Part shown: in pieces, positions 1-29,317 of the stretch
Layout: each line of letters starts with the position of its first letter
Position numbering within the stretch: the stretch's first letter is position 1
IMG/VR virus record: IMGVR_UViG_3300027747_002221
Coordinates: 1 to 64,000 of that record
DNA length: 64,000 nt
Strand: one strand, 5' to 3'
Program-made: the position numbers and the translations under genes
Notes under the pieces: generated by a model
What the model was told of the DNA's origin: nothing
The model's input: the letters and a program-made list of their open reading frames with translations, nothing else
The model's database searches: none

Positions 1-579
1 TATGATTAGAATTTCAAACCATTTTATTATAAAATTTTCATAATCTTTAAAAGAAACATTTTTTTGATTTGCCTGGTTTGAACTATAAGGTTTTATTTCA
101 ACAGATTCTAATCTAGATAATAGATTAAAATTTAATATCATTTCATCTACGTCTTTTTTTATTAACTTATCCCCGGCCAACATTAGAACACAAAAAGGTT
201 TTTTAAGTAAAGCCATATTTTTCCATACTAATTCTGAATCTTGTCTACAATCAAAATCATAACTAACAGATGTATAGCATTCTTCATCCGTTGTTATATC
301 ATTTATCATTGATAAATTTGTAATAATATTAAATTTTACATTGGGGTTATATAATTTACATACTTGTTTTAAATCATAAAAGTATTTTTTAGGTAGTAAG
401 CCAACCTCACCCCCGTATAAATCTATTTGATCTATGGTTTCATATGTAGATATTTCTGATAATTTTTCATTCAATTTATCTAAATTTAATAATTTTTTAT
501 CTGATAATTGTTGATTATCTAAATAACAAAAATCACATCTAAAATTGCAATAGTACCACGGATTAATAGAAATATTCAT
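1..579 (-). CDS. Radical SAM protein (N-terminal part; runs off window edge)
   Basis: Not in ORF track. My translation from ATG at 579 (TAATG overlap with upstream stop): MNISINPWYYCNFRCDFCYL...IDLYGGEVGLLP, with CxxxCxxC and GGE motifs. Confidence 0.85.
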   Translation of the reverse strand, partial: MNISINPWYYCNFRCDFCYLDNQQLSDKKLLNLDKLNEKLSEISTYETIDQIDLYGGEVGLLPKKYFYDLKQVCKLYNPNVKFNIITNLSMINDITTDEECYTSVSYDFDCRQDSELVWKNMALLKKPFCVLMLAGDKLIKKDVDEMILNFNLLSRLESVEIKPYSSNQANQKNVSFKDYENFIIKWFEILII

Positions 580-1175
580 TAAATATCTAAATTTATAACT
601 ATTGCAAGTCGATCTTCATTACCAGTATAAGTATTAACTTCGTGCCAAATATAAGCAGGTGCTACAACCAATCTATTTTTTTTAGTTTCCACAGAAAATG
701 TTTCTGGGGGGTGAAAATGTAGATTAGAATGAAAAGCCGGATCTCTTAATATTAATTCCCCGCCGTATTGACTATTATCTATATCATTAAGATAAAAAAT
801 TCCAAATGCGGACGCACCAATATGATTATGTAAAGATTTATTTTCTCCAGTTTTCATGAAAGGTAACTTTCCTGAATTTTTAGATACCATAACTTTTAAC
901 ATATCTTTTGTCAAAATGTTTTCATCGTAAGATGATGCTAATTCATAAAAACCATCAAGAAATAAATTTTGCAACTCTCGCAAAATTGGAAACTTATTTA
1001 AATTATTTTCTGTAAATAGAGGTATCTCATCATCTATTAAAGATTTATTCGCATTATTTTGTGCCATATAATCTTTAAAAACAGTTAATGTTATTGTTTT
1101 TATTTTCTCATTCCAACTATCATCTAAAATATGATCCTTAATTACCACATTAACAGGGAATATCGTTTTTATCAC
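579..1175 (-). CDS. 2OG-Fe(II) oxygenase-like protein (TIGR02466-like)
   Basis: LHNH...GIFYL...GGELILRDP...PAYIWHEV...DRLAIVINL jelly-roll pattern; paralog of 1896..2534. Confidence 0.7.
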   Translation of the reverse strand: MIKTIFPVNVVIKDHILDDSWNEKIKTITLTVFKDYMAQNNANKSLIDDEIPLFTENNLNKFPILRELQNLFLDGFYELASSYDENILTKDMLKVMVSKNSGKLPFMKTGENKSLHNHIGASAFGIFYLNDIDNSQYGGELILRDPAFHSNLHFHPPETFSVETKKNRLVVAPAYIWHEVNTYTGNEDRLAIVINLDI

Positions 1176-1899
1176 AGGGTTCTCCTTTATAAACTTTTAT
1201 ATATTTATTATAGATTTCTTCAGCAATAAATTGTTGTCCAATCCCATTAGGATGATTATCTTTTTCTGATAATACAAATTTAGAATATTTGGATGAAAAA
1301 GTATATCCTCCAAGTTTTTTATCGGATGGCCAACCAATAATATTATTCATATTATCTATTTTATTGAAATATTTTGAGTTTAATAGTTGAGCAAAAAACT
1401 TAGTTTGATCTATATCTGTTCTAAAAATATTAACTAATGGAAAATGTATTATTGGAATTTGTTTCATCTGACAGAAATCATCAAGATAACAAATTAATCT
1501 AAGTGTTTGTTCTATACACTCCATATGCAATTCTTTTTTATCTATATGTTCCTTTAATTTTTTGGAAAAAGAATTCAATTCCTCTAAAAAATTCGGATCA
1601 TGATCTTCACAGTAAATGTTATTAATGTCATACTGGTCATACAATGATGTTTTTAATCCGTACGTCCATCCAACAACCACTAAATCTATTTTTTCAGGAT
1701 TTTCCAATATATTGGACATTAATTTGTCATACAAATAGATATTAGATGCACCTGTCTTTGAAATATTTTTAACAGGTAAATTTAATTTTTCGGATATTAA
1801 ATCTGGCCATTTTTTAAAATTAAAATCCACATCTAAATCATCATGGGGTTGCCATTTACCATCTGAATAACTAGTACCAGCAGTTAGAATATATTTCAT
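1150..1899 (-). CDS. SGNH/GDSL-like hydrolase or acyltransferase
   Basis: N-terminal AGTSYS, GASN block, C-terminal DNHPN (DxH) motif. Confidence 0.55.
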   Translation of the reverse strand: MKYILTAGTSYSDGKWQPHDDLDVDFNFKKWPDLISEKLNLPVKNISKTGASNIYLYDKLMSNILENPEKIDLVVVGWTYGLKTSLYDQYDINNIYCEDHDPNFLEELNSFSKKLKEHIDKKELHMECIEQTLRLICYLDDFCQMKQIPIIHFPLVNIFRTDIDQTKFFAQLLNSKYFNKIDNMNNIIGWPSDKKLGGYTFSSKYSKFVLSEKDNHPNGIGQQFIAEEIYNKYIKVYKGEPCDKNDIPC

Positions 1900-2534
1900 T
1901 TTCTATCTAAATCCACAACAGCACAAAATCGATCTTTTCCATAAAATTTACTAACTTCATGCCAAATATATGATGGCCCTATAATCATTCTATTTTTTTT
2001 AGTTTTAATTTTAATTTTTTGCTTAGGATGAAATCCTTTATTCGCATGAAATGCAGGATCATGTAAAATTAATTCACCGCCATATTGACTATTATCTACA
2101 TCTGACAAGTAAAATATAGCAAATGCTCTGGATGGGTGATTATGTAATCCCACTACCATATTCTTTTTTAATTCCGTAAAATTGCCGGAATCACTAAAAA
2201 ATATTTTTTTTATTTCATCTTTTGTTAGAATATTATTTTTAAAACTTGAAGCTAATTCATAAAAACAATCAATATACATATCTCGCAATTCTTTTATTAT
2301 AGGAAACATAGATGAGGTTTCCTCAGTAATAACATATGGTTTGGAAAGTTTGTGATAATCGTATGTCAATAAAAAAGTATTTTTATTATTTTTTAAATCT
2401 TTTCTCAAATCGCAATATTCACCATTTAACGATAGGGCCTTTAAAGTATTAATTAATTCGCAATTCCATTGTTCAGATTTTTCATAATCTTTTATTAGAA
2501 TATTAGTAAAAAATGGAGTTATTATATTATTCAT
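1896..2534 (-). CDS. 2OG-Fe(II) oxygenase-like protein (TIGR02466-like)
   Basis: LHNHP...FYL..DNSQYGGELILHDP...PSYIWHEV...DRF; near-identical C-terminal half to 579..1175. Confidence 0.7.
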   Translation of the reverse strand: MNNIITPFFTNILIKDYEKSEQWNCELINTLKALSLNGEYCDLRKDLKNNKNTFLLTYDYHKLSKPYVITEETSSMFPIIKELRDMYIDCFYELASSFKNNILTKDEIKKIFFSDSGNFTELKKNMVVGLHNHPSRAFAIFYLSDVDNSQYGGELILHDPAFHANKGFHPKQKIKIKTKKNRMIIGPSYIWHEVSKFYGKDRFCAVVDLDRK

Positions 2535-3627
2535 TTAATGTATAACATTTAAGATATTCTTTATTATGTCTATTTTCTAAAATAGATTGTATCAAATAGT
2601 GATTGACTGTACCCAAATCTATAGAGAAAAATGATCCTGCAGAATGCTCGAATGTGGCTTCTGTTTCAATTATTTTTTCTAAAAAATCATCCGTAAAATT
2701 TACAAAACAAGGCAAAAAATCTAGTTTATTAATATCAGATTTTACGTATGTATAAACGCTTTCCTCATTCCAACTGTTACCCGCAATATTGTTAAATTTT
2801 TTAAATAATTCTATATCATCTTTAGTTATATTACTAAAAGTAATCTCATTATTAAATGACGTATACATGAAAGGTTCCTGCCAAATTCTTTCACACGTAA
2901 AAAGTTTTGCATATTCCGAGTTATCTGTTATTATATCGTAAAAATTTTCAAAAGTATATTTCTTTGTTAAATTTAGTTTTTTAGTAAATCTTTCTGTAAG
3001 AATATGAACAAAAAATATTTCTTTTATTTCATACAAATATTTGATAAGATCTTTTTTAATTAGCGGCACTAAAGAATTTTTTAATTCTTTTTTATAACTG
3101 CCATCGTATAAATATGACGCAAGTAAATATTCCACACTAGCAAAAGAAAGAAATTCGTGAGTATTGAATTTATATTGTACAAGATTATTATATTTCTCAG
3201 AAAACTCGTTAAAACTAATATTATAGATATGATGACTTTTAGTAAAAACAGTTAGACGAAATAATAATGATTTATATATGTAATATATTTTATCTAAACT
3301 AGTTTTTTTTAAAATATTAACTAACCAAATAATTAATAGATCTAAAAATATATTTTCTTTGGCATATATAATAACTTTTGTATCCAAAGATTTTAAATAC
3401 AAAAACATTTTTTCAATAGTATCAAATGTTTTTTCTTTACCTATTATATCCTCTAAATCCATGCCCGCGGCAATTATTTTTCCATGATGATTTCCTGCAG
3501 CGGAAACTAACATATGTTCGGAAATTTTTTCAGAAATAACAATTCTATCTAAATTAACATCAATATGTGTATCATTAGAAATATATACATTATTAAATAA
3601 ATGAATTTTTTCTATCAAATGTAACAT
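2527..3627 (-). CDS. Hypothetical protein, paralog of 9113..10312
   Basis: 366-aa ORF; shares HLFxxVxxxxDxHID, RxVIS and SxExxLAxxxYD blocks with 9113..10312. Confidence 0.6.
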   Translation of the reverse strand: MLHLIEKIHLFNNVYISNDTHIDVNLDRIVISEKISEHMLVSAAGNHHGKIIAAGMDLEDIIGKEKTFDTIEKMFLYLKSLDTKVIIYAKENIFLDLLIIWLVNILKKTSLDKIYYIYKSLLFRLTVFTKSHHIYNISFNEFSEKYNNLVQYKFNTHEFLSFASVEYLLASYLYDGSYKKELKNSLVPLIKKDLIKYLYEIKEIFFVHILTERFTKKLNLTKKYTFENFYDIITDNSEYAKLFTCERIWQEPFMYTSFNNEITFSNITKDDIELFKKFNNIAGNSWNEESVYTYVKSDINKLDFLPCFVNFTDDFLEKIIETEATFEHSAGSFFSIDLGTVNHYLIQSILENRHNKEYLKCYTLNE

Positions 3628-4684
3628 CTTGTATTTTTATAACCTTTCTTATAAAATTTCCCTCATCTTCGTAAGGAGTAACCTCAATATCTAGTCCATT
3701 TGCTTCTATGATAGTTGCAGCAATTTGTTTCATAGATTTACAATGTTCCTCTACCAAACCAAACTTTTTCTGATCCTTCACAGTTTTTCGGCATCCATTA
3801 CATATTAAAAACATTGGGCAGGTATAACAGGCATTTTTCATAGTATTTAAATCGTAATCATTTGTCAAAGGAGTAAAAAAATCTCCAGACATTTCCGATT
3901 CAAAGTCTATTGGTTTTTCCTTGTCGTCTCCAAAGGATCCGCAAGAGTAATAATCTCCTTCAGGTTGCAATGCTCGTATGCTGGAATCGCAATTTCTAGA
4001 TTGAGGGCATGTAGTACCTTTGCCAGTCAATCTGCCCAACATTTGCGAAGTATTATGTTCCCAAGGATGCAGACCTGCTTTCCAAATATTTATATACTGT
4101 TTGTATATTTTAGAAAGTAGATACGGTTTTTCCTGATCTCCTGATGCCATTGCATAATTTATTTTACAAACCACATTCATTTTTTTCGCAAGTTCCACAG
4201 TCTTTAAAACAGTATCTTCATTTTCTTCCGTGATAACTGAAATAAATTGTGGTCTATACCCAATCTTATCCAACATCATATTAGAAACATCCCAAAAATC
4301 TTTTTCGGTAAATGGGGTATAGTCACCTTTTAATCGCCCATTACCATATTGAAAACTTGTAGAAACACCAACTCTAGGATTTAAAAATAAATCTGTCCAT
4401 TTTTTAGGTTGTTTATAAAATGGCCAAAGATTAGTAGTTAAAGATAGTGTGGTTGATAAATTATTTTTATCCAAATAATCTATTATATCCCAATAATATT
4501 TTGGTTTCATCATCAAAGGATCGCCACCATTAACAATAATAGTATTGGTATTCGGAAATCGTTTTAAAAATTTAAAAACATAGTCTAAATTTAAAACTGA
4601 AGTATGTTTTTCACTAATTTTAGTTGAAGAGCAGAAAGTACATTTGAAATTACATACCTCAGTTGGTTTTATAATTAAGTCCAT
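3593..4684 (-). CDS. Radical SAM/SPASM domain protein
   Basis: CNFKCTFC, NGGDP; C-terminal CPQSRNC...YYSCG...CYTCPMFLICNGC...HC auxiliary cluster motif. Confidence 0.88.
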   Translation of the reverse strand: MDLIIKPTEVCNFKCTFCSSTKISEKHTSVLNLDYVFKFLKRFPNTNTIIVNGGDPLMMKPKYYWDIIDYLDKNNLSTTLSLTTNLWPFYKQPKKWTDLFLNPRVGVSTSFQYGNGRLKGDYTPFTEKDFWDVSNMMLDKIGYRPQFISVITEENEDTVLKTVELAKKMNVVCKINYAMASGDQEKPYLLSKIYKQYINIWKAGLHPWEHNTSQMLGRLTGKGTTCPQSRNCDSSIRALQPEGDYYSCGSFGDDKEKPIDFESEMSGDFFTPLTNDYDLNTMKNACYTCPMFLICNGCRKTVKDQKKFGLVEEHCKSMKQIAATIIEANGLDIEVTPYEDEGNFIRKVIKIQDVTFDRKNSFI

Positions 4685-5187
4685 TACATTAATCCCGGAA
4701 TATACATTTCATAGCTTATTAGTCTTCTTGGGCCTGTAATATGTTTTGCTCTATGCTGAAAAATTTTATTTTGATTTAGCCACATAAAGTCTCCTCGTTT
4801 TGGATATATAACAAATTCTTCAGTTTGATTTTTAACTTGTATATTATTTCCATAGTTATCATCTAAATATAACAACAGATTAGAATTAAAATTTTTCTTT
4901 ACCATATAATCGGTGTGCCATTCTTTGGATTTAGTATCAACTCCCTGCCACATAGATTTTTCTAATAATTCTATGTTTGGAAATAATTTAGATAAGTGTC
5001 TATCAAATATTATATCATAAATTTCACTCAAATATTTTTGTGCTTTTTTATCTATGATAGGATTGTTATCTATAATGTCTTCATTCTCAGAACAATCTAA
5101 AAATACAAACTCAGAAAAATCATAATTATCTATTTCGGCAAAATGCCCTTGTATATACCCGTTAACAAAAAAATCATACGTATTCAT
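4684..5187 (-). CDS. 2OG-Fe(II) oxygenase
   Basis: WHTD (HxD)...FQHRA (H)...RRLISY (2OG-binding R). Confidence 0.72.
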   Translation of the reverse strand: MNTYDFFVNGYIQGHFAEIDNYDFSEFVFLDCSENEDIIDNNPIIDKKAQKYLSEIYDIIFDRHLSKLFPNIELLEKSMWQGVDTKSKEWHTDYMVKKNFNSNLLLYLDDNYGNNIQVKNQTEEFVIYPKRGDFMWLNQNKIFQHRAKHITGPRRLISYEMYIPGLM

Positions 5188-5726
5188 ATATTAAAATAGT
5201 AAGATGATACTATTCTTTTATTTTTAGACTTTTCTGCCCTATGTAAAAAATTATTTTTGCAATTTACCCCAATGAGCATTCCTTCTGTTGGATATATTTT
5301 AACTTCAGAATTTTTAGTTTTAAAATAAATTGCACCATCATCTTTCATATTGGAATGATATAATAAAAAGAAACAATTAGGTCCTTCGCGTAAATCATTA
5401 TGCCATACCGTTGCATCGGTGTTTACCCCTTCCCAAATGCGTCTTTTTTCTATAGTATAATCTTTAAAATATGGTTCCACAATATCTTTTGCAATCTGTA
5501 AATGTATTTGATGTAATATTATGTTATAAATTTTTATATCTTTTGGATGATAATCATTATTTTTACCTCCCTCATGTATCCAAATAATATCACTTAATAA
5601 AGGAGATATAATATCATGGTATTTTTTTCCGGTTGCTATAAAAAACCCATCGTGTGTAAATTTTTTAATTAGGTTTTTCGAATCCATATTTGTTATTACA
5701 TTCTCTGGTATATTCTGTTTCGCCAA
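5184..5726 (-). CDS. 2OG-Fe(II) oxygenase
   Basis: WEGVN...WHND...FLHRA...KRIVSSY; start may be Met at 5687. Confidence 0.72.
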   Translation of the reverse strand: MAKQNIPENVITNMDSKNLIKKFTHDGFFIATGKKYHDIISPLLSDIIWIHEGGKNNDYHPKDIKIYNIILHQIHLQIAKDIVEPYFKDYTIEKRRIWEGVNTDATVWHNDLREGPNCFFLLYHSNMKDDGAIYFKTKNSEVKIYPTEGMLIGVNCKNNFLHRAEKSKNKRIVSSYYFNI

Positions 5727-5958
5727 TAGATTCTACACCTTCAATCTCGCAAATTTTTCTATTAACTTCTCGTATTTCTTCTTTTAGTAAATTTGTATAT
5801 GGTTCCAAATTGAATATTAAATTTATATACATTTCATATTTTTCTTTATTATCTTGGCAATCGTATAAGCGAGTTATCCAAAGGTTATATAACTCTGCAC
5901 ATAAATCTCGTTCGTCACCTATTGTATTTTTTATTTTGAATAATTCTTCTGCTGTCAT
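5665..5958 (-). CDS. Hypothetical helical protein
   Basis: 97-aa ORF overlapping both neighbours in the operon. Confidence 0.5.
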   Translation of the reverse strand: MTAEELFKIKNTIGDERDLCAELYNLWITRLYDCQDNKEKYEMYINLIFNLEPYTNLLKEEIREVNRKICEIEGVESIGETEYTRECNNKYGFEKPN

Positions 5959-6458
5959 AATATATTAAAATCAAAAGATGCCACTCGGCGTTGTATACTA
6001 GATGGTGTTGCTTTATGCCAGAACTTTTTACCGTTATTTACTAGGAATAAATCTCCAGCAATTGGCTGAAAAGATTCTTCGCAATCCCCATATTTAAATT
6101 GGACTGCTCCGCCAGTTTCTAAATAAGTATTATCAAAATAATATAGAAAAAATAAATCGTACCCCTCAAACATATCAGTATGCCAACCTTGATTATCCTT
6201 ATCTACACCGTCCCACACGATAAATTTATTATATCTCGAATTATGCCAATTAGCATCTATATATTTTTCTTTTAAGTAATATGCAAATGTGTTTAATCTA
6301 TTAGTTAATTCCAAAGGAATATCTTTGATACCATTATCTCTAGATCTTTCTTCCACATTCAATAATTTAAAATCATTAATTTTTATTAATGATAGCGCAT
6401 CGGGTTCCAAAAATTTAAAAAATCCCTTTTCTTCTATATCTTTTACTATACTAGACAT
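5955..6458 (-). CDS. 2OG-Fe(II) oxygenase
   Basis: WDGVD...WHTD...GGAVQF...FWHKA...RRVASFDF. Confidence 0.72.
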   Translation of the reverse strand: MSSIVKDIEEKGFFKFLEPDALSLIKINDFKLLNVEERSRDNGIKDIPLELTNRLNTFAYYLKEKYIDANWHNSRYNKFIVWDGVDKDNQGWHTDMFEGYDLFFLYYFDNTYLETGGAVQFKYGDCEESFQPIAGDLFLVNNGKKFWHKATPSSIQRRVASFDFNIL

Positions 6459-8125
6459 GATGCCATTACCTCACTTTTAATAATCTCCAAATTATTTATT
6501 AATAATTCTTCAATAGTTTGTATTCTAAATTTGCCTAGTAACATTCTTATTGATCTAGGTTTAGAATTTTGGTCAAAAATATCATCAATTTCTTCTTGTA
6601 TAGGAATAAAATCATCTAGTTGCTTTATTATATTAAAACTAAGTTTGGCAAAATCTCCGGGTGTTATATATGTTTCAAATAAATGATAGCAATTTTTTAT
6701 TAAAAAATTACCTGCATTATTCATAAACCACATCTCTTTTATATCATCTTCAGTAAAAGAATAACAAGATTTTATCGTTTCAAAATAATTTACTTTATTT
6801 TTATACAATGTATTCCAACTATCAGACCCAGCTTCGTCTACTATATCGGAATAAACTTTTACAGTTTTAATGTTATACTTTTCTTTATAAACTTTATCGT
6901 TTAATCTAGAATCCGGAAGAAACATATAGTCATGTCTATAACTTCCCCATGCCTTAAAATTCCATATTATTTCCATTTCGTCGTAAAAATCTTGTATTGT
7001 TGAGCCTGGCATGCCCAATATTAATTCTAATGCAGGAACAGGAAAATTAAATTCTTCGCATCTATTTTTAATATGTTCACTTAATTTAATTTTATCTTTA
7101 AAAGAAAGATCAATCCTTTCTGCAACTTTCATTGCCTCATCTGATATACTTTGTATTGAAACTGTAGGCACTATAGAATTTCTAATTAGATCATTCCATT
7201 TATCATCTTTTTGGTTTTTTATTCTAATATCCGATCCAACTATATTAAACCAAGAATCAATTAATTTTTTTCTTCTATTTAAATCTTTGGATTTAACAGT
7301 CGAAATATCAGTCAGACTAAATTTATTATTCCATGCAAATTCAAATATTTCTAAATCTCTTTCTTCAAAAGCACCAAAATTTGCATCAGTTAAATATGCT
7401 CCAGTATACCCACATTTGATCATAGCTAAAATATCTCGTTTAACTATATCCAATGGCTTTTTGTAAATTTTTGTTCCTATTCCTCCACCCCATTCGCAGA
7501 ATACACATTTATAGGGACACCCCCGTGTTGTTTCCAAAACAATAAAAGGTTCCATTTGTTTTGTATAAGCATAATTTAAAATTTCAGTTAAATACTTTTC
7601 ATGTTCTTCATATACTGAATAGTTAATATCGAGTAAATATGTTTTATTTTTTTCAGATTGCAATTCCCACGATACATCTTTTTTATTAGGTTTGCCATTT
7701 GAGGTAAACCAGGAATCAATTAAATCTTCTACGAATACTTCTCCAGGTTTAGTGGGTTGGCATATAAAATCATAATCAATCCTTGATTCTAAAAATTTAT
7801 TGTCATTGGTACCAATATGCGGGCCACCTAATACTGTAATTTTATTTGAATTTTTATTTTTAATTGTTTTTGCTATATTATCTAATATATCGTAATTCCA
7901 GACATATGAAGAAAATAAAATTATATCTGCTGTTTGTATTTCTTCAATTACCTCATCTATAGTCTGATACATATCCCATTTATAAGGAGCTGGCAACCAT
8001 TCTACATTTTTAGAATATTTACCGTAACGTGTATAGTGACTTTGACATAGTAAATATGTCAAATTATTTACTAAAGACCAGTCAGCGTGAGGGGGATTAA
8101 TGAATGCTATTTTTAATTTCAACAT
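6446..8125 (-). CDS. Cobalamin-binding (B12-dependent) radical SAM protein
   Basis: N-terminal Rossmann-like FSSYVWN...VLGGPHI; ETTRGCPYKCVFC; LTDANFG. Likely start MLKLKIAFINPP at 8125 (ORF track extends to 8161). Confidence 0.82.
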   Translation of the reverse strand: MLKLKIAFINPPHADWSLVNNLTYLLCQSHYTRYGKYSKNVEWLPAPYKWDMYQTIDEVIEEIQTADIILFSSYVWNYDILDNIAKTIKNKNSNKITVLGGPHIGTNDNKFLESRIDYDFICQPTKPGEVFVEDLIDSWFTSNGKPNKKDVSWELQSEKNKTYLLDINYSVYEEHEKYLTEILNYAYTKQMEPFIVLETTRGCPYKCVFCEWGGGIGTKIYKKPLDIVKRDILAMIKCGYTGAYLTDANFGAFEERDLEIFEFAWNNKFSLTDISTVKSKDLNRRKKLIDSWFNIVGSDIRIKNQKDDKWNDLIRNSIVPTVSIQSISDEAMKVAERIDLSFKDKIKLSEHIKNRCEEFNFPVPALELILGMPGSTIQDFYDEMEIIWNFKAWGSYRHDYMFLPDSRLNDKVYKEKYNIKTVKVYSDIVDEAGSDSWNTLYKNKVNYFETIKSCYSFTEDDIKEMWFMNNAGNFLIKNCYHLFETYITPGDFAKLSFNIIKQLDDFIPIQEEIDDIFDQNSKPRSIRMLLGKFRIQTIEELLINNLEIIKSEVMASCLV

Positions 8126-9116
8126 ACTTAAAAGTCTCTTTAAAGACGCACTCACCCACATCTCTTACAATTTTTTTATAGTCATTTTTTATAAAACAAG
8201 TAAAAGGGCATTTTTTAAAATATTCACATTCGAAACAATTGTATTGATCAAAGAATTTTTGTATTATGATGGTAGAACCTAAATTTTTAGTGCTACTATC
8301 TCTTAATAAAACAGATCCTGAGCATCCGGCAGGATTAGTACCATCATACATAACTGTATAACTATTGCCTCTTGTACAGGACATTCTATTTTCTCTAGAA
8401 TTTTCTGTAAAATATGATATATTCAAACATAAAGGGTAATTATCAACCAAGTGTTTATAAAATTTTAATAGGTCTGATTCTTTTGGCATTAAGGTTTCAG
8501 AAATACTTATTGATGGTAGAAAAGAATCCCAATCGCATCTGAAATTATTATACAAATAATCAAAATATGAATCGCCCTTTATAACAGCTTCAATATTTTG
8601 TTTTGTCATTACCAAGGATATCATTTCAATTTTATCTTTAAAAATTTCTATATTATTTTTAAAGATATCAAACTGAGTATTAGTAAATCTACCATGGGGA
8701 TCGTATGATACTGATATTTTTAAATTATTTTTTTCAAGGAAATCTGAAACTTTTTTAGTTTCAAAAAAAACTAAATTTGTAACAAAATTAAAAACTAGTG
8801 TTTTTTCGGTATCCACCTTACTTTTTATTTTATCTATGAATCTTTGATATATACTTAAAAATTCTTCTTGAATCCAAATATCTTGAAATATTTCTCCACC
8901 CATTATATGTAATTTAAAATATGTAGATCTTTTATTATTATTGATCCATTCTACGATTCCTGGGACTTTGGAAAGTATTTCTTTTTCAGATGCACCTTGT
9001 GTATTGGTATGATCTTGAGGACAAAATACACACTTAAGATTGCAATGATCAAAAAGACAAATAACTAATTCTGCATAATCTATAATTTTTTTATCAATTA
9101 ATTCATAGGGTATCAT
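8097..9116 (-). CDS. Radical SAM protein with Cys-rich (SPASM-like) C-terminus
   Basis: CNLKCVFC, MGGE; C-terminal CTRG...GCSG...CFECEYFKKCPFTC...C. Confidence 0.82.
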   Translation of the reverse strand: MIPYELIDKKIIDYAELVICLFDHCNLKCVFCPQDHTNTQGASEKEILSKVPGIVEWINNNKRSTYFKLHIMGGEIFQDIWIQEEFLSIYQRFIDKIKSKVDTEKTLVFNFVTNLVFFETKKVSDFLEKNNLKISVSYDPHGRFTNTQFDIFKNNIEIFKDKIEMISLVMTKQNIEAVIKGDSYFDYLYNNFRCDWDSFLPSISISETLMPKESDLLKFYKHLVDNYPLCLNISYFTENSRENRMSCTRGNSYTVMYDGTNPAGCSGSVLLRDSSTKNLGSTIIIQKFFDQYNCFECEYFKKCPFTCFIKNDYKKIVRDVGECVFKETFKYVEIKNSIH

Positions 9117-10312
9117 TTTAGTGTAAATTTAAATAATTTTTCTCTCATTTTTTGCTGAGCTAAAGATTTAATATATGGTAAAAGTACAAAAAGTATTTGT
9201 TCTCTTAAATCAAGCGGAATATGAATCATTGCAATTTTTTCTTTAAGATTATCGTCTAAAACGTTATTATAATCTTCTTCCGACAAAATTTCTTTTCTTG
9301 CAGAATCCATATATTTAAAATTATAACTTGGATCACCATCATGGCCCGCATTTGTCAAATCTTTTATTATTAATGCTTTAGTGTCCTCAGACATCCACAC
9401 CGGCCAATTTCTAGAATCAGTCATCATTTTTGCAAAAGGAACGTTTGAAAAATCCACATCAGATGTCCCAGATGATCCTCCGGGATTACTATAACCCATA
9501 ATAGAAATAGCAAATTCATCGGTAACATTACATAAATCTTTTACATCTTTATCACTTATCAAAGATAAATCAAGCTTTGAATTCTTTCCAGGTTGATAAC
9601 TTTTAAAGTATGGCGCGCCGTCAAGATTTTTAAAATATGGGGCTTTATAAACTGACATTTTATCTAATTCTAAATAATTTTTAATTGTTTTAGAATGACC
9701 TCCCAATATTTTTTGTGCATCGTCATCCAATATATAGGTATCTATATGTTTTCTTACCTCTAAGATGTATAGTTCATATGTTCGTTTAATAAACCGTGCA
9801 AATAATTTTTTTAATTTTTCTTTTTTACTAAAGTTTCTATCATAGAATGCTGTTGCCAACATAAATTCTATAGAAGGCGAAAAATCTAAATCAGAAAAAT
9901 CAGACACCTCTGCAGTATCCCATAAGGATTTTATACGAGAAATTAAAGAATCGCACGGATTGCTATATACCTGCATTTTATGCCCATAGCAATCCGCAAA
10001 AGTTTCAAAAGAATCTTTATCCATATTCGTAGTGGATTTTAACCAAGATACTATTATCTTAGAAAAATTTTCTTCATCTGCAAATATAACAATTTTTTCT
10101 CCCTTTATAGCATAAAGGTTGCGTATAAAATCTGAAAAAGAAATGTCGCCCAACGCCTCATTCCAAGTTTTACCCGTGTTTAATGTTTTTGGATACACTG
10201 AAGCATCTTTAAGATCGTCCGTAGCATATTCTTTCGATATAACTACGCGATAATTAAAAGTGTCGATATGCTTATCTTGTTGTAAGAATACATCGTCAAA
10301 TAGGTGCAACAT
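9113..10312 (-). CDS. Hypothetical protein, paralog of 2527..3627
   Basis: 399-aa ORF; shared motifs as noted for 2527..3627. Confidence 0.6.
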   Translation of the reverse strand: MLHLFDDVFLQQDKHIDTFNYRVVISKEYATDDLKDASVYPKTLNTGKTWNEALGDISFSDFIRNLYAIKGEKIVIFADEENFSKIIVSWLKSTTNMDKDSFETFADCYGHKMQVYSNPCDSLISRIKSLWDTAEVSDFSDLDFSPSIEFMLATAFYDRNFSKKEKLKKLFARFIKRTYELYILEVRKHIDTYILDDDAQKILGGHSKTIKNYLELDKMSVYKAPYFKNLDGAPYFKSYQPGKNSKLDLSLISDKDVKDLCNVTDEFAISIMGYSNPGGSSGTSDVDFSNVPFAKMMTDSRNWPVWMSEDTKALIIKDLTNAGHDGDPSYNFKYMDSARKEILSEEDYNNVLDDNLKEKIAMIHIPLDLREQILFVLLPYIKSLAQQKMREKLFKFTLK

Positions 10313-11003
10313 TGGATTCCTCTTCTTTATTTTCTATTAATTGTAATCCTTCAGATATTCCAAAAGTTAACAAAAATAATGGGTTATTTTCGGTTGCCCA
10401 GTATGAGTATAAATTTTTTCCTCTAAACATATATTCACTGAAATATTTGGTATAAAACTTCAAATTTGATTCTTTAATCTTGCCATAGTAAATATAAAAA
10501 AGCTCATGCTTTAATAGAGATAAAAAATTTATGCCTGTTAGTTCTTCAGTTTCATCTACAGGAAATCCTTTTGCAAATTCTTGCATTTCCGGGGAATTCA
10601 CAATATACATATTAAATAGTGTTAAACTGTCTAGTTTACTTTCCCATTGTTTTATGATTTCCAAATTATCTTGTATAAAATTTTTATGGGGTATCAAATT
10701 TTCTATATCTATTTCTTTATATTCTAACAATAAATTTATTGTTAAAATTTCTAAACTTGGAATAGAACAAAGAACTGTAGAATTTAAATATTCCTTTAAA
10801 AGTTCTTCCTGTTCATTTTTATCATTAAAGCTAATATCGCATGGTATATCCAAATTAGAAATATACGTTAACAGTTTTGTGCCTTTAATTTTACTATTAG
10901 TATAATCTATTATAAATTCAACAGATTTATTTTCAAAATATTTTTTTAAATCTTCAATTGAAATAGGTGCAATAGTGTTAATTATAGTATTTGGTAAATT
11001 CAT
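10296..11003 (-). CDS. Hypothetical protein
   Basis: Likely start MNLPNTII at 11003 (TAATG coupling to stop of 11003..11638). Confidence 0.6.
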   Translation of the reverse strand: MNLPNTIINTIAPISIEDLKKYFENKSVEFIIDYTNSKIKGTKLLTYISNLDIPCDISFNDKNEQEELLKEYLNSTVLCSIPSLEILTINLLLEYKEIDIENLIPHKNFIQDNLEIIKQWESKLDSLTLFNMYIVNSPEMQEFAKGFPVDETEELTGINFLSLLKHELFYIYYGKIKESNLKFYTKYFSEYMFRGKNLYSYWATENNPLFLLTFGISEGLQLIENKEEESNVAPI

Positions 11004-11638
11004 TATCTTCTTCCTCTGGCAAAGTGGCATGCTGAATGGCATGATGCATGACAAACTGTGGCATCGTACACATAACTCTGATTTCTCGCATAATTTTGAT
11101 ACGCTGTTCTACATCTTTCCATAAAATTTTCCATTGAGTATGTAGATATTTGTAAATTTGTGTCTACTGCCCCGCGTGCAGGCGTTACATAATCACTCAA
11201 CCCCGTCTGCCCGGTAGAAAAGTTTAAATATGCTACAGCAATTACATCGTATACGAAACCCGCAGTAGGCTTAGTTCCGTTATTGCCACCAGTCCCATTA
11301 ACAAATAAACGAGCCTGGACACTTCTTATTTTGAGATACCGAGATGTAAAATAACTAAGATAAGTATGGATCCTCTCTGCAATAATTTGGTCACCGACAC
11401 CGGCAGGGTTGCCATCCATTTTCCCAATAAATGGGTCATTGGGTGGATAGTTAGGATTGTCATAATTATTGCCGCCCATATCACTAGTGGGTATAACTGC
11501 AGTCGCATATGCTGTTCCTGGGGCATATGTGGGCAAATTATTCGTACCCCAAGTCACACCCTGCCAATTGGTATACATATAGTCTTGGAATCTGCTTATT
11601 ATATTACGTTCGTTAACGGGATTGGTTAGTACCGCCAT
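11003..11638 (-). CDS. Gly/Asn/Thr-rich protein with C-terminal (CHxx)3 tail; candidate modification substrate
   Basis: Ends ...DATVCHASCHSACHFARGRR; lies immediately downstream of a rSAM/SPASM gene. Confidence 0.65.
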   Translation of the reverse strand: MAVLTNPVNERNIISRFQDYMYTNWQGVTWGTNNLPTYAPGTAYATAVIPTSDMGGNNYDNPNYPPNDPFIGKMDGNPAGVGDQIIAERIHTYLSYFTSRYLKIRSVQARLFVNGTGGNNGTKPTAGFVYDVIAVAYLNFSTGQTGLSDYVTPARGAVDTNLQISTYSMENFMERCRTAYQNYARNQSYVYDATVCHASCHSACHFARGRR

Positions 11639-12693
11639 GTTTCTTTCCTTATATTAATAATCTTATTTGATATAATATTTATACCTGCCAGAGATTTCAT
11701 TAAACTTTTTGGTGCACCACATACGTCATCTTGCCATGATAATTGGTGACAATCTCCACCACAATACTCAAAAACTTCGCAGGAATAACACCGGGTGTCC
11801 CCGCTTCTTTCACAGGCAATATTTTCTATGCGAGCAGGATTTGTTAAAAGCTGTTCTATACTATCAGTTATTTTTCCAAAATAGTTTTCTGGGGCGCTAT
11901 TTGGGCAACCTGCGATTGTCCCATCTGCATTAATTGTAAATAATTTTTCCTCACAATTTCTACAAAAAGTGCCAGATTTATTAAATCCGCTCTCAAACTT
12001 AATATATACATCTTCTAAAAAATCATTAGAAAACCATTTTCTTGCATCATACTGAACAGTTTGTTCATGCATTTTTAAAAACCATGCATCCTGTTCCAAA
12101 TTAGAAGGAAATATTTCCGGATGCAAATTTGCATTACCATTACCCGTCAATCTTTCAAATGATACTTCTTGTACTCCGAGTATTTTTATCCAGCTAAGTA
12201 AATGAATTGGGTCTATATTAATAGTATCTTTAGTTACACTAATAAAAAGCTTTACAGTTACGCTTTCATTGAGTAAAGTTTTTACATTTTTTAACCAAAG
12301 ATCAGATTGTTTAGTATTTGCAAATCTTATTTTTGGATCCCAACTTGTACCTACTCTATTTCCGAGTTGATTTTTTACAAAATTTATAATTTCAGAATCA
12401 AGTTTGTACGTCAAGTTTGTTGTTGCACACCAGGACATATTATTCCAAAGACCATTACAAGAATTATAAACCTTTTTCATTTCAGAAACAGGGACAAGAA
12501 AAGGTTCTCCGCCATGAAATTCAAAGTGTACGTTATCTAAATTTGGGGCGTAGGATTTTAGTCTGGTTATCCAATCTATAACTAAATCAGTATTCCAATA
12601 AACTTTGGCACCGTTAATACCATTAGTAAAACAATGTTTACAATTTAGGTTACAGGTTTCTGTTGTTTTTAAATAAACTAAAGCATTTTTCAT
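11626..12693 (-). CDS. Radical SAM/SPASM domain protein
   Basis: CNLNCKHC, FHGGEP; CRNC...IAGCP...CYSCEVFEYCGGDC...C SPASM pattern. Confidence 0.9.
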   Translation of the reverse strand: MKNALVYLKTTETCNLNCKHCFTNGINGAKVYWNTDLVIDWITRLKSYAPNLDNVHFEFHGGEPFLVPVSEMKKVYNSCNGLWNNMSWCATTNLTYKLDSEIINFVKNQLGNRVGTSWDPKIRFANTKQSDLWLKNVKTLLNESVTVKLFISVTKDTINIDPIHLLSWIKILGVQEVSFERLTGNGNANLHPEIFPSNLEQDAWFLKMHEQTVQYDARKWFSNDFLEDVYIKFESGFNKSGTFCRNCEEKLFTINADGTIAGCPNSAPENYFGKITDSIEQLLTNPARIENIACERSGDTRCYSCEVFEYCGGDCHQLSWQDDVCGAPKSLMKSLAGINIISNKIINIRKETWRY

Positions 12694-12705
12694 TAAACAA
12701 TTATA

Positions 12706-13176
12706 TTATATTTTAGGTAATTTGTCTATTAAAAATTTTTCCAAACCAAAACTTAGAATTAAAGATTCCTCATCATTAATTGCCTGATGTTTTGTATTTG
12801 CGGGTATGAATATTGTTTTGCCCTTATTAAGTATAATACTTTTACCACCAAGTATTAAATTTAGAGAACCATGTATGACCTCAACAAATACATCGTCGGG
12901 GTCGGTATGCTCTGGGAAACTTTTTGAATTTTTGAATGACCGAAAGGCATGGCAGGTCACTGGCCCATTGTGAGAAAATGATTTACAGTAATTAAAAATG
13001 TTTTCATTATATTTTTCCAAACCTTCAAGTTTTATACAATGATTATATACAGAATGTAAATGTCCTATATCATTAATAGTATTTTCTCTGCCTTCTGTAT
13101 CTATATAATACAATAAATGCTGTTGGTATATTAAATTATTTTCTATTATTTTTTCAAATTCTTGCAATGTTATCAT
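12706..13176 (-). CDS. JmjC/cupin-type 2OG oxygenase (YcfD/RoxA-like)
   Basis: FPEHTDPDDVF (HxD)...IFIPANTKHQA...LILSFG. Confidence 0.65.
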   Translation of the reverse strand: MITLQEFEKIIENNLIYQQHLLYYIDTEGRENTINDIGHLHSVYNHCIKLEGLEKYNENIFNYCKSFSHNGPVTCHAFRSFKNSKSFPEHTDPDDVFVEVIHGSLNLILGGKSIILNKGKTIFIPANTKHQAINDEESLILSFGLEKFLIDKLPKI

Positions 13177-23598: not shown

Positions 23599-23624
23599 TT
23601 GAATATAATGTTGATGCAACCTAT

Positions 23625-28017: not shown

Positions 28018-28094
<77 letters not shown>

Positions 28095-28511: not shown

Positions 28512-28516
28512 ATTTT

Positions 28517-28602: not shown

Positions 28603-28642
28603 ATTTGCTTATTATAAACTCTTTAGCTAAAAAGAACAATCT

Positions 28643-28933: not shown

Positions 28934-28939
28934 TCATTT

Positions 28940-29302: not shown

Positions 29303-29317
29303 TAAACTTCCTAACTA

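What the first reader, a model, noticed from the sequence alone, without database searches (positions are those of the whole stretch)
1..13176. Phage operon of 5 radical SAM enzymes and 6 Fe/2OG oxygenases fused to the tail-fibre operon: candidate RiPP-like virion-protein modification system
Seen: 17 consecutive minus-strand genes, nearly all overlapping at their start and stop codons, continuing directly from the collagen-like fibre gene. They encode three rSAM enzymes with SPASM-like C-termini (3593, 8097, 11626), a fourth rSAM cut by the window edge (1..579, missed by the ORF track), one B12-dependent rSAM, five 2OG-Fe(II) oxygenases, a JmjC/cupin and an SGNH protein. There are no nucleotide-handling genes (kinases, deaminases, DNA transferases). 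Established: rSAM/SPASM enzymes are typical peptide and protein maturases (thioethers, cyclophanes, epimerization), B12-rSAMs methylate unactivated carbons, and JmjC/2OG enzymes hydroxylate protein residues. Inference: this is a multi-enzyme pathway that chemically decorates a phage structural protein rather than DNA or a small metabolite. I know of no characterised system of this kind in phages.
Basis: partly seen in the sequence, partly recalled or inferred. Interest (0 to 1): 0.93.

Follow-up and report, generated by a model that had tools for sequence, protein, structure and literature searches.

The report
Radical-SAM maturation cassette for a virion protein
A T4-like phage carries a widely shared but uncharacterised set of radical-SAM and oxygenase enzymes. 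They most likely modify the invariant Cys/His-rich C-terminal tail of a small fibre-linked virion protein, and the same system also sits in the chromosomes of predatory Bdellovibrio-type bacteria.

Summary
There are 17 tightly packed minus-strand genes downstream of a collagen-like fibre gene: five radical-SAM enzymes, five 2OG oxygenases and a JmjC-type cupin.

The cassette is not private to this phage. Its core is cupin, rSAM_1, a "CH-tail" protein, a phrog_20767 protein, a ~370-aa protein, and rSAM_2, rSAM_3 and rSAM_4. That core recurs in the same order in four unrelated cultured jumbo-phage groups (pPa_SNUABM_DT01, RSL2/RSF1/FLC6/S13, Atu_ph07, Phosso). It also occurs in more than 200 IMG/VR contigs and in Bdellovibrionota chromosomes.

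The gene after rSAM_1 always ends in a near-invariant 16-residue tail, (C-H-x-S)x3-R-G-R-R-stop. The rest of that protein is only about 30% conserved.

Its Atu_ph07 homologue, gp170, is a published virion protein. It is most abundant in the top gel band although it is only 32 kDa. The enzymes were not found in virions.

CH-tail genes also stay next to a conserved fibre C-terminal domain, even in loci where the rSAM genes lie about 10 kb away.

Best reading: a RiPP-like protein-maturation system acting on this tail. The chemistry is unknown and no modification has been shown. No published description was found in the searched libraries or paper collection.

The parts
1..579 (-). rSAM_4, N-terminal 193 aa. 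It is cut by the contig end. The full protein is 308 aa in the identical contig L006.
   Evidence: CX3CX2C present, PF04055 30.5 bits in L006. Orthologues of 42-53% identity sit next to rSAM_3 in four cultured phages. Found in 81 of 84 loci.
579..1175 (-). 2OG-Fe(II) oxygenase (2OG_a), accessory
   Evidence: PF13759, 31.4 bits against a cut-off of 27.
1150..1899 (-). 249-aa protein of unknown function. It is specific to this phage lineage.
   Evidence: No hit. Present only in L005 and L006 among 84 loci.
1896..2534 (-). 2OG-Fe(II) oxygenase (2OG_b), a frequent accessory gene
   Evidence: PF13640, 28.6 bits. Present in 51 of 84 loci.
2527..3627 (-). 366-aa conserved protein of unknown function, a paralogue of the protein at 9113-10312
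   Evidence: No PDB or Pfam hit. Not related to the rSAM fold by hhalign.
3593..4684 (-). rSAM_3, a SPASM-type radical-SAM enzyme and the most conserved gene of the cassette
   Evidence: PF04055, 36.9 bits. Identity is 56-60% to jumbo-phage orthologues and 52-61% in Bdellovibrionota. Conserved Cys: C11, C15, C18, C226, C232, C248, C286, C289, C295, C298 and C315. The family profile aligns over its full length with anSME, E 8e-6. Best NCBIfam match is DynA, far below the cut-off.
4684..5187 (-). 2OG-Fe(II) oxygenase (2OG_c), accessory
   Evidence: PF13640, 23.2 bits, below the cut-off. A W-H-T-D...H motif is present.
5184..5726 (-). 2OG-oxygenase-like 180-aa protein with weak support
   Evidence: PF13640, E 0.17. 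A W-H-N-D...H motif is present. Matches phrog_19592.
5665..5958 (-). 97-aa protein that travels with the B12-rSAM and 2OG_d
   Evidence: found in 19 loci, always after 2OG_d.
5955..6458 (-). 2OG-Fe(II) oxygenase (2OG_d), part of the B12-rSAM sub-module
   Evidence: PF13640, 28.8 bits. Present in 30 loci.
6446..8161 (-). B12-binding-domain radical-SAM enzyme, a candidate C-methyltransferase and an accessory sub-module
   Evidence: PF02310 30.3 bits and PF04055 26.1 bits, both just under their cut-offs. KedN5-family match, 94.5 bits against a cut-off of 700. Present in 29 of 84 loci.
8097..9116 (-). rSAM_2, a radical-SAM enzyme with a partial SPASM/Twitch-like Cys set
   Evidence: C25, C29, C32, C247, C294, C297, C303, C307 and C323 are invariant in 53 sequences. 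Present in 72 of 84 loci.
9113..10312 (-). 399-aa conserved protein of unknown function (core family A4)
10296..11054 (-). 252-aa phrog_20767 protein, a core component with a confident but unmatched fold
   Evidence: E 3e-68. AF2 model has pLDDT 85.5 and pTM 0.81. The best PDB fold hit has E 0.2. Present in 88 of 120 motif-anchored loci.
11003..11638 (-). CH-tail protein (211 aa), the candidate substrate. Its body is variable. The invariant C-terminal tail C-H-A-S-C-H-S-A-C-H-F-A-R-G-R-R is encoded at 11006-11053.
   Evidence: invariant residues are C196, H197, S199, C200, H201, C204, H205, R208, R210 and R211. Mean column identity is 25-28%. The Atu_ph07 homologue gp170 is a virion protein. 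There are 581 homologue clusters and no Pfam family.
11626..12693 (-). rSAM_1, a full SPASM radical-SAM enzyme that always lies directly upstream of the CH-tail gene in the main cassette form
   Evidence: TIGR04085 SPASM domain, 32.7 bits against a cut-off of 27. The best families are PapB, anSME and DynA, all below their cut-offs. CX3CX2C plus eight conserved C-terminal Cys; best PDB matches are anSME, CteB and ChlB.
12706..13176 (-). JmjC-type cupin, a probable Fe(II)/2OG protein hydroxylase and the first gene of the cassette
   Evidence: PF08007 29.2 bits (cut-off 22) and PF07883 37.8 bits. H76, H90, D92 and H130 are invariant. 22 of 28 family members hit JmjC_2.
13178..14848 (-). Collagen-like fibre protein (556 aa). 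Its C-terminal domain (aa ~415-556, nt 13181-13606) is co-inherited with the cassette.
   Evidence: PF01391 79.7 bits; Peptidase_G2/IMC 24.3 bits against a cut-off of 25; tail-fibre PHROGs. The C-terminal domain lies directly upstream of the cupin in 32 of 65 loci. It lies directly upstream of CH-tail genes in the split variant.
15222..18128 (-). 968-aa tail-fibre protein, given as context
   Evidence: phrog_17885 tail fiber, E 6e-86.

Best explanation
This is a horizontally mobile protein-maturation cassette of the RiPP type.

Core components:
- Four radical-SAM enzymes with SPASM-type auxiliary clusters (rSAM_1 to rSAM_4).
- One JmjC-type Fe(II)/2OG cupin.
- Two conserved proteins of unknown fold.

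The window adds accessory tailoring enzymes: one B12-dependent rSAM and five 2OG oxygenases.

The substrate is most likely the invariant 16-residue C-terminal tail, (C-H-x-S)x3-R-G-R-R, of the small protein encoded directly after rSAM_1. The body of that protein evolves fast. It takes domain insertions and is kept in the virion, so it is a structural protein rather than a discarded leader. It is genetically tied to a fibre protein with a conserved C-terminal domain.

Inferred mechanism:
- The rSAM enzymes abstract hydrogen atoms and build cross-links or oxidised residues on the Cys and His of the tail. Candidates are Cys-derived thioethers or formylglycine, and His-to-C-beta cyclophanes.
- The cupin and 2OG enzymes hydroxylate His or Arg, and the B12-rSAM methylates.
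- The result would be a rigid, reactive or metal-binding C-terminal module for assembly of, or adhesion by, the fibre apparatus.

Shown: gene content, synteny, motif invariance, and virion location of one homologue. Inferred: that the tail is the substrate, which chemistry occurs, and what it is for.
For: 1. Enzyme type.
- rSAM_1 has a full SPASM domain above the curated cut-off.
- The conserved Cys sets are present across homologues.
- Family profiles match anSME, CteB, ChlB and YydG, all of which act on protein or peptide substrates.

2. Conserved order.
- The gene order is the same in four unrelated cultured phage groups.
- It is also the same in 80 IMG/VR loci.

3. The tail.
- The ORF after rSAM_1 ends in the near-invariant tail in about 50 distinct proteins, while the body is 25-28% conserved.
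- Starting from rSAM_3, 62 of 84 loci show the tail. The misses are loci that do not cover the region or belong to the split variant.
- Starting from the tail, 96 of 120 loci show a core rSAM, 88 show phrog_20767 and 84 show rSAM_1.

4. Atu_ph07 gp170, Table S5 of PMC6102473.
- It is 31.89 kDa and its mass matches the CH-tail homologue.
- It gave 8 unique peptides and 35% coverage from virions. It is most abundant in gel band 1, where proteins of 87-127 kDa peak, after heating in SDS.
- None of the cassette enzymes was detected.

5. Link to the fibre. The fibre C-terminal domain stays adjacent to CH-tail genes even when the rSAM genes are about 10 kb away.

6. Residue match. The invariant residues are Cys, His and Arg. 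These are the residues targeted by the nearest enzyme relatives:
- Cys by PapB, CteB, QhpD and anSME.
- His by DynA and by the triceptide synthases HaaB and HtkB (PMC11499958).
- His or Arg by the ribosomal oxygenases that Pfam JmjC_2 covers (established knowledge).
Against: - No mass-spectrometric or structural evidence for any modification exists here.
- All matches to named maturase families are far below their curated cut-offs, so the chemistry cannot be assigned.
- The Atu_ph07 virions were PEG-purified, and that proteome also lists non-structural proteins such as RecA-like, SSB and RNR. Virion association and the band-1 signal are therefore suggestive, not proof.
- A Cys/His stripe could simply bind metal without being modified.
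- Bdellovibrionota carry the system without an adjacent fibre gene, and their CH-tail proteins have no signal peptide. The function is therefore not strictly a phage tail-fibre one.
- No protease or RRE domain was identified.
- The two conserved unknown proteins could be the real substrates or could perform unexpected chemistry.
Confidence: 0.55

Rival explanations
1. The Cys/His tail is a metal or Fe-S binding site rather than a substrate. On this reading the CH-tail protein is a metalloprotein: a trimer-stabilising metal stripe as in phage fibres, or an electron-carrier or scaffold partner of the rSAM enzymes. The enzymes would then act on something else, such as the fibre, the phrog_20767 protein or the ~370-aa protein.
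For: The tail has Cys at i, i+4 and i+8, each followed by His. AF2 predicts it as a short helix, which would line up the ligands on one face. His-based metal sites in phage fibre trimers are established knowledge. Two conserved proteins of unknown function are also always present.
Against: Such strict invariance of spacing, of the Ser and of the R-x-R-R end, together with obligatory adjacency to a SPASM enzyme, is typical of maturase core peptides. The copy number of the repeat varies (3, 4 or 6), as in repeat-type RiPP cores. If it were an electron carrier, it should not be in virions while the enzymes are absent.
Confidence: 0.15
2. The tail is the core of a free RiPP. It would be cut off and released as a small cross-linked peptide, for example an envelope-targeting compound of the darobactin/dynobactin type. 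The N-terminal 110-290 residues would then be a long leader.
For: The core is C-terminal, as in several known rSAM peptide precursors (my recollection for the darobactin and dynobactin precursors; not checked here). The best NCBIfam match of rSAM_3 is DynA. The system occurs in organisms that attack Gram-negative cells: large phages and Bdellovibrionota.
Against: No protease or exporter is conserved in the cassette. The 'leader' is poorly conserved and takes whole-domain insertions, the opposite of the usual RiPP pattern. The Atu_ph07 homologue is found in virions with 35% coverage. The DynA score is 50 bits against a cut-off of 450.
Confidence: 0.1
3. The 2OG oxygenases, and the glycosyltransferase-methyltransferase just beyond the window, act on the collagen-like fibre. 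They would work as prolyl or lysyl hydroxylases followed by glycosylation, as in giant-virus collagen. This would be independent of the rSAM core.
For: Four of the 2OG enzymes hit PF13640 at E <= 1e-3, and the 180-aa protein hits it weakly. That family includes prolyl 4-hydroxylases, which is established knowledge. They sit next to a protein with strong collagen repeats. A GT1 plus SAM-methyltransferase fusion follows in L006.
Against: 2OG genes accompany the cassette in loci whose fibre gene has no collagen repeats, and in Bdellovibrionota. Only the non-collagen C-terminal domain of the fibre is co-conserved. This reading is compatible with the main explanation, as an add-on for some of the accessory enzymes.
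Confidence: 0.1
4. The cassette makes a small molecule or a modified nucleotide, cofactor or sugar rather than modifying a protein.
For: Two genes annotated as dihydrofolate reductase are inserted in the S13/FLC6 version. MoaA, QueE and viperin appear among the weak rSAM hits. A sugar-biosynthesis region lies elsewhere in the window.
Against: No nucleotide-, sugar- or lipid-handling gene belongs to the conserved core. The hits to MoaA, QueE and viperin cover only the generic N-terminal cluster-binding region. The full-length matches are to SPASM protein and peptide maturases. The invariant-tail protein is left unexplained.
Confidence: 0.05

Closest known systems
Anaerobic sulfatase-maturating enzyme (anSME), the archetypal SPASM radical-SAM enzyme
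   Same: It is the best solved-structure match for both the rSAM_1 and rSAM_3 family profiles, over the full length for rSAM_3. It acts on a Cys or Ser in a short motif of a whole protein, not on a small peptide. The third repeat, C-H-x-x-R, has the same Cys-to-Arg spacing as the sulfatase C-x-P-x-R motif.
   Different: The NCBIfam anSME model scores 46 bits against a cut-off of 349. No sulfatase is present. The motif lacks the Pro/Ala position. Four paralogous enzymes are present rather than one.
Thioether-forming rSAM-SPASM maturases: PapB (ranthipeptides), CteB (SCIFF), QhpD (quinohemoprotein amine dehydrogenase gamma subunit) and the CXXX-repeat target family TIGR04115
   Same: rSAM_1 gives full-length, low-scoring matches to all of them. 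The substrates are Cys-rich repeats next to the enzyme gene. QhpD cross-links a protein subunit that stays in the final complex.
   Different: All scores are far below the family cut-offs. The acceptor residues of those systems (Asp, Glu and others at fixed spacing) are not evident here. The partner residue here is an invariant His.
Triceptide (three-residue cyclophane) synthases acting on His-x-x motifs (HaaB, HtkB, YhhB), and the uncharacterised His-Xaa-Ser (Hxs) system of NCBIfam
   Same: Each repeat contains an H-x-S or H-x-x tripeptide. HaaB and HtkB join His-C2 to the C-beta of the third residue on HAA and HTK motifs, and some precursors carry 2-3 Hxx motifs (PMC11499958). rSAM_1 matches YhhB, FxsB and HxsB weakly.
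   Different: Scores are far below the cut-offs. The Hxs precursor family does not match, since the CH-tail protein has no NCBIfam hit at all. The invariant Cys has no role in triceptide chemistry. The carrier here is a 130-300-aa virion protein.
Proteusin/polytheonamide-type heavily tailored RiPP pathways
   Same: They combine several rSAM enzymes, B12-dependent rSAM C-methyltransferases and Fe/2OG hydroxylases acting on one ribosomal precursor (established knowledge).
   Different: There the leader is conserved and the core is long and variable. Here the core is short and invariant, and the body is variable and retained in a particle.
Distal adhesin encoded just after the long-tail-fibre gene in T-even phages (gp37 followed by gp38)
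   Same: A small, fast-evolving protein with variable inserts is encoded just after a fibre gene whose C-terminal part resembles a chaperone or cleavage domain. The gp37/gp38 arrangement itself is from my own knowledge and was not checked here.
   Different: There is no sequence or fold similarity. No enzymatic maturation is known for gp38.

Membership tests
Radical SAM superfamily | CX3CX2C cluster motif and the PF04055 core | tested here: met
   The motif is present in all five enzymes and is invariant in the families. PF04055 scores above the cut-off for rSAM_3 (36.9) and for full-length rSAM_4 (30.5). It scores below the cut-off for rSAM_1, rSAM_2 and the B12 enzyme.
SPASM subfamily | C-terminal 7-8 Cys set including CX2CX5CX3C, able to hold two auxiliary [4Fe-4S] clusters | tested here: met
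   rSAM_1: TIGR04085 scores 32.7 bits against a cut-off of 27. C244, C247, C263, C302, C305, C311, C315 and C325 are conserved in 59 of 59 sequences. rSAM_3: eight conserved Cys, but TIGR04085 scores 22.7, below the cut-off. rSAM_2 and rSAM_4 have partial sets.
RiPP biosynthetic system | Ribosomal precursor encoded beside its maturase, with a conserved site of modification | tested here: met
   The CH-tail gene follows rSAM_1 in the main form of the cassette. The tail is invariant. Co-occurrence holds in both directions.
RiPP biosynthetic system | Leader peptide removed by a protease to release a small product | tested here: not met
   No protease is found in the conserved core. The body of the Atu_ph07 homologue is present in virions.
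RiPP biosynthetic system | Demonstrated post-translational modification of the core | not testable with these tools
   This needs mass spectrometry of the tail.
PapB / ranthipeptide maturase (NF047865) | Score at or above the curated cut-off of 340 bits | tested here: not met
   rSAM_1 scores 52.1 bits and rSAM_2 scores 30.5 bits.
Anaerobic sulfatase maturase (TIGR03942) | Score at or above 349 bits and a sulfatase C/S-x-P/A-x-R substrate | tested here: not met
   rSAM_1 scores 46.3 bits. No sulfatase gene is present. Only the Cys-to-Arg spacing of the third repeat resembles the motif.
Dynobactin/darobactin maturases (DynA, DarE) | Score at or above 450 or 650 bits, with a Trp-containing core peptide | tested here: not met
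   rSAM_3 scores 50.6 bits to DynA. The tail contains no Trp.
His-Xaa-Ser system (HxsA/B/C/D) | HxsB and HxsC above their cut-offs, and an HxsA-type repeat protein | tested here: not met
   HxsB scores 26 bits and HxsC 31 bits, against cut-offs of 370 and 268. The CH-tail proteins have no NCBIfam hit.
Class B (B12-dependent) radical-SAM methyltransferase | N-terminal cobalamin-binding domain plus an rSAM core | tested here: inconclusive
   PF02310 scores 30.3 against a cut-off of 32.1. PF04055 scores 26.1 against 29.5. KedN5 scores 94.5 against 700. The architecture fits, but every score is just under or far under its cut-off.
JmjC / cupin Fe(II)-2OG oxygenase | Double-stranded beta-helix with an H-x-D/E...H facial triad | tested here: met
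   PF08007 scores 29.2 against a cut-off of 22. H90, D92 and H130 are invariant in 51 of 51 sequences. 22 of 28 members hit JmjC_2.
   No hit in Pfam at E <= 1, NCBIfam, PHROGs or PDB sequences. The conserved catalytic blocks were not examined directly.
Collagen-like phage tail fibre | G-X-Y repeats plus matches to tail-fibre families | tested here: met
   PF01391 scores 79.7 bits. Several tail-fibre PHROGs match.

The most novel reading that the evidence does not exclude
Large phages and predatory Bdellovibrionota share a previously unrecognised class of post-translational modification. A set of radical-SAM enzymes would convert an invariant (Cys-His-x-Ser)n C-terminal tail of a surface or virion protein into a cross-linked, reactive or metal-binding 'warhead'. 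That module would be used to assemble or anchor the apparatus that grips Gram-negative prey. This would be the first enzyme-built, RiPP-like chemistry in a virus particle.
Probability: 0.25. Interest if true: 0.92.

Novelty: new variant of a known kind. Interest (0 to 1): 0.8.

Why it matters
To my knowledge, phage virion proteins are known to be cleaved, glycosylated or self-cross-linked, but not rebuilt by dedicated radical enzymes. If the reading is right, this cassette would do several things.

- It would extend RiPP-type chemistry from small secreted peptides to structural proteins of virus particles.
- It would explain a block of up to 17 genes that recurs in more than 200 viral contigs and in several biocontrol-candidate jumbo phages, where it is currently listed as accessory with unknown function.
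- It would give a defined 16-residue substrate and four enzymes for discovering new radical chemistry on Cys/His motifs.
- Its presence in Bdellovibrionota chromosomes points to a shared molecular tool among agents that attack Gram-negative cells.

It is directly testable, because cultured phages (Atu_ph07, S13/FLC6/RSL2, pPa_SNUABM_DT01) carry it.

Tried and rejected
- Nucleotide search of the region against 50,697 phage records found no match. Close relatives exist only in metagenomes.
- Fold searches found nothing usable. The CH-tail protein (AF2 pLDDT 74) has no PDB fold match (best E 2.4), and in BFVD it matches only its own family. The phrog_20767 protein (pLDDT 85.5) has no PDB fold match.
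- Profile searches against PDB sequences found nothing for the CH-tail, phrog_20767, ~370-aa and rSAM_2 families.
- I tested whether the 366/399-aa proteins are degenerate rSAM enzymes, following a weak YhhB hit. This is rejected by hhalign (probability 1.2%).
- The SGNH assignment is rejected for lack of any support.
- The fibre C-terminal domain has no PDB sequence match. Only a near-threshold Pfam Peptidase_G2/IMC hit exists.
- Exact-protein look-ups of two Bdellovibrionota CH-tail proteins found nothing on record. A third worked.
- Literature searches for radical SAM with tail fibre, virion, SPASM, phage or Bdellovibrio found no description of the system. The jumbo-phage comparative review PMC7824862 does not mention radical SAM.
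- The virion proteome of phiRP31, which has a more distant rSAM cluster, was not followed up, because I could not identify its CH-tail gene.

Full report
**What is in the window**

The window is the first 64 kb of a 222,055-bp IMG/VR contig. It belongs to a T4-like phage: it encodes gp43-type DNA polymerase, gp41 helicase, UvsX and a clamp loader. It also carries 25 tRNA genes and has only faint nucleotide similarity to cyanomyoviruses.

From position 13176 down to position 1, the minus strand carries 17 tightly packed ORFs. They lie directly after a collagen-like fibre gene (13178-14848) and a 968-aa tail-fibre gene. In order of transcription they are:

1. JmjC-type cupin
2. rSAM_1
3. 211-aa protein ending in C-H-A-S-C-H-S-A-C-H-F-A-R-G-R-R (the "CH-tail protein")
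4. 252-aa phrog_20767 protein
5. 399-aa unknown protein
6. rSAM_2
7. B12-domain rSAM
8. 2OG oxygenase
9. 97-aa protein
10. Weak 2OG-like protein
11. 2OG oxygenase
12. rSAM_3
13. 366-aa paralogue of the 399-aa protein
14. 2OG oxygenase
15. 249-aa unknown protein
16. 2OG oxygenase
17. rSAM_4, cut by the contig end

An identical contig (L006) shows that the operon continues with the rest of rSAM_4, two more 2OG oxygenases, and a glycosyltransferase-methyltransferase fusion.

**The cassette is a conserved, mobile module**

- rSAM_3 is 56-60% identical to proteins of Ralstonia/Burkholderia jumbo phages (RSL2, RSF1, FLC6, S13), Agrobacterium phage Atu_ph07, Sinorhizobium phage Phosso and Pseudomonas phage pPa_SNUABM_DT01.
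- In all four phage groups the neighbours are orthologous and in the same order: cupin, rSAM_1, a small protein, phrog_20767, (unknown protein), rSAM_2, rSAM_3, rSAM_4, plus variable 2OG genes.
- IMG/VR holds 246 relatives of rSAM_3. In the 80 loci fetched the same order recurs. Counts over all 84 loci (80 IMG/VR plus the four cultured-phage loci): rSAM_4 in 81, rSAM_2 in 72, rSAM_1 in 71, cupin in 65, phrog_20767 in 56.
- The B12-rSAM, 2OG_d and the 97-aa gene form an optional sub-module present in about 30 loci.
- Papers on FLC6, S13 and phiRP12/31 merely list these genes as accessory.

**The candidate substrate**

The ORF that follows rSAM_1 ends, in about 50 distinct proteins, with C-H-[AST]-S-C-H-x-[SN]-C-H-x-[SN]-R-[GS]-R-R-stop.

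- In a 34-sequence alignment the only invariant columns are C196, H197, S199, C200, H201, C204, H205, R208, R210 and R211. Mean column identity is 25%, and whole domains are inserted in some members.
- The DNA pattern for the tail occurs once in the window against 0 expected by chance.
- The link holds in both directions. Starting from rSAM_3, 62 of 84 loci contain the tail; the misses are loci that do not reach that region or belong to a split variant. Starting from the tail, 96 of 120 short loci contain a core rSAM, 88 contain phrog_20767 and 84 contain rSAM_1.
- The family has 581 clusters in the protein collection. All are annotated as hypothetical, and none has a Pfam domain. NCBIfam has no model for it.
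- Its predicted alpha/beta fold (pLDDT 74) matches nothing in the PDB. In BFVD it matches only its own family, including Atu_ph07 gp170.

**It is a virion protein in a cultured phage**

Table S5 of Attai et al. 2018 (PMC6102473) lists gp170 at 31.89 kDa. This is exactly the mass I compute for the CH-tail homologue.

- It gave 8 unique peptides and 35% coverage from purified virions. It was found in gel bands 1-9 and was most abundant in band 1.
- Neighbouring ~30-kDa proteins peak in bands 7-8. Band 1 otherwise peaks for proteins of 87-127 kDa.
- The fibre-like gp176 upstream of the cupin is also in the virion.
- None of the cassette enzymes, the cupin or the phrog_20767 homologue is listed.

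This fits a structural protein that ends up in an SDS- and heat-stable high-mass form. The caveat is that the preparation was PEG-purified and also contained some non-structural proteins.

**Link to fibres**

The last ~140 residues of the window's collagen-like fibre give a near-threshold Peptidase_G2/IMC hit.

- This domain is encoded directly upstream of the cupin in 32 of 65 loci. That includes Atu_ph07 gp176 and its Phosso counterpart. The collagen repeats themselves are not conserved.
- In a split variant of the system the rSAM genes lie about 10 kb away. There, two tandem short CH-tail genes (126-140 aa) follow within 3-5 nt of a fibre gene ending in this same domain.
- Overall, 61 of 120 tail-anchored loci have that domain no more than 2.6 kb upstream on the same strand.

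The CH-tail protein is thus tied genetically both to rSAM_1 and to a particular fibre C-terminal domain.

**Not only phages**

The tail pattern also hits 32 loci in GTDB species genomes.

- About 20 are Bdellovibrionota, and some lie on contigs of 1.3-2.8 Mb.
- These loci carry rSAM_1, CH-tail, phrog_20767, rSAM_2, rSAM_3 (52-61% identity), rSAM_4 and 2OG genes.
- The clusters sit next to lspA or between fatty-acid genes.
- No fibre gene was seen nearby, and the CH-tail proteins have no signal peptide.
- In a midpoint-rooted FastTree tree of rSAM_3, read without support values, the Bdellovibrionota sequences form one clade (which also holds a 223-kb contig binned as Flavobacteriaceae) apart from the other phage sequences. 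That argues for resident genes rather than mis-binned phage DNA.
- Tails with 4 or 6 repeats, and tandem paralogues, also occur.

**What the enzymes look like**

- rSAM_1 has CX3CX2C plus eight conserved C-terminal Cys. It passes the SPASM domain cut-off.
- rSAM_3 has eight conserved C-terminal Cys, and rSAM_2 has six.
- Against solved structures, the rSAM_1 profile best matches anSME, CteB, 8VPO, ChlB and YydG. The rSAM_3 profile aligns over its full length with anSME.
- In NCBIfam the best matches are PapB, anSME, DynA, DarW, DarE and QhpD for rSAM_1, and DynA for rSAM_3. All are 10-fold or more below their family cut-offs.
- So these are new families within the peptide/protein-modifying SPASM class.
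- The cupin passes the JmjC_2 cut-off and keeps an invariant H-x-D...H triad. From established knowledge, Pfam JmjC_2 covers the ribosomal oxygenases, which hydroxylate His or Arg in proteins.
- The invariant tail residues (Cys, His, Arg) are therefore the residue types that the nearest relatives of the core enzymes act on.
- His-x-x tripeptides are proven substrates of triceptide synthases, which join His-C2 to the C-beta of residue 3 (PMC11499958).

**Most likely mechanism (inference)**

The CH-tail protein is made as a fibre-associated virion component. Before or during assembly, its C-terminal tail is threaded into the SPASM enzymes.

The enzymes would use 5'-deoxyadenosyl radicals to abstract hydrogen and form one or more of the following:
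- Cys-derived thioethers or formylglycine
- His cyclophanes

The cupin and 2OG enzymes would add hydroxyl groups, and the B12-rSAM would add methyl groups, in the phages that carry them.

The product would be a compact, rigid, possibly reactive or metal-binding end-piece. It could lock the protein covalently into the fibre or whisker apparatus, which would fit the top-band behaviour of gp170. Alternatively, it could contact the prey envelope. Which of these applies cannot be decided with the tools at hand.

**Rivals**

- Metal-binding tail without modification
- Released free RiPP
- 2OG enzymes acting on the collagen-like fibre
- Small-molecule or nucleotide pathway

These are set out with their evidence in the Rival explanations section. 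None explains the reciprocal rSAM/tail linkage and the virion data as well as the main reading does.

**Novelty and verdict**

Radical-SAM/SPASM maturation of ribosomal peptides and of a few proteins is well known. A multi-rSAM cassette devoted to an invariant Cys/His tail of a virion protein, shared between large phages and predatory bacteria, is not described in the libraries and papers I could search. I rate it a new variant of a known kind and of high interest. The main open risk is that no modification has yet been observed.

Noticed in passing
window 1-10000 against the rest of the window: The enzyme-coding part of the cassette has 26-28% G+C, against 32-43% in the remainder of the window. 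The CH-tail, rSAM_1, cupin and fibre genes are at 33-39%. This suggests that the enzyme block was acquired from a lower-GC source, or more recently than the structural genes.
   Followed up: no
L085-L119, for example L098 2958-3644 and L117 10001-10609: The same cassette, with the same invariant tail, sits in Bdellovibrionota chromosomes among cellular genes (lspA, fatty-acid genes). rSAM_3 from these genomes forms its own clade.
   Followed up: partly
L120, L147, L152, L165, L186, L197, L230, L235; also L095, L101 and L114: There is a split variant of the system. Two tandem short (126-140 aa) CH-tail genes directly follow a fibre gene with the conserved C-terminal domain, and the rSAM cluster lies about 10 kb away.
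   Followed up: partly
L006 14106-18184, just beyond the window's left edge: The operon continues past rSAM_4 with two more 2OG oxygenases, a 135-aa protein and a 557-aa fusion of a GT1 glycosyltransferase with a SAM methyltransferase.
   Followed up: partly
L002 6855-8032 (Burkholderia phage S13, genes 077 and 078): Two genes annotated as dihydrofolate reductase are inserted between rSAM_2 and rSAM_3 in the S13/FLC6/RSL2-type cassette. Their role is unexplained.
   Followed up: no
L003 15089-15631 (Atu_ph07): A clear rSAM_4 homologue (53% identity) lies right after gp165. The annotated gene there (gp164, 15281-15994) starts later and is called hypothetical. The annotation may be truncated, or the gene may be disrupted.
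   Followed up: no
window 28018-33784: 25 tRNA genes, all on the minus strand, lie in a 5.8-kb block.
   Followed up: no
window 50675-63748 and 22261-23619: This is a run of sugar-type biosynthesis genes: HAD hydrolase fusions, a phosphoheptose-isomerase-like domain, an aminotransferase and a cytidylyltransferase. It suggests a phage-encoded sugar or nonulosonic-acid pathway.
   Followed up: no
window 13683-14252 (+): The 189-aa plus-strand ORF rich in P, V and A is the antisense shadow of the collagen G-X-Y repeats. It is not a gene.
   Followed up: yes
L102 3910-4266; L103 864-1430; L108 156-761: Some tails carry four or six C-H-x-S repeats instead of three. Variable repeat number is what one expects of a repeat-type maturase core.
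   Followed up: no
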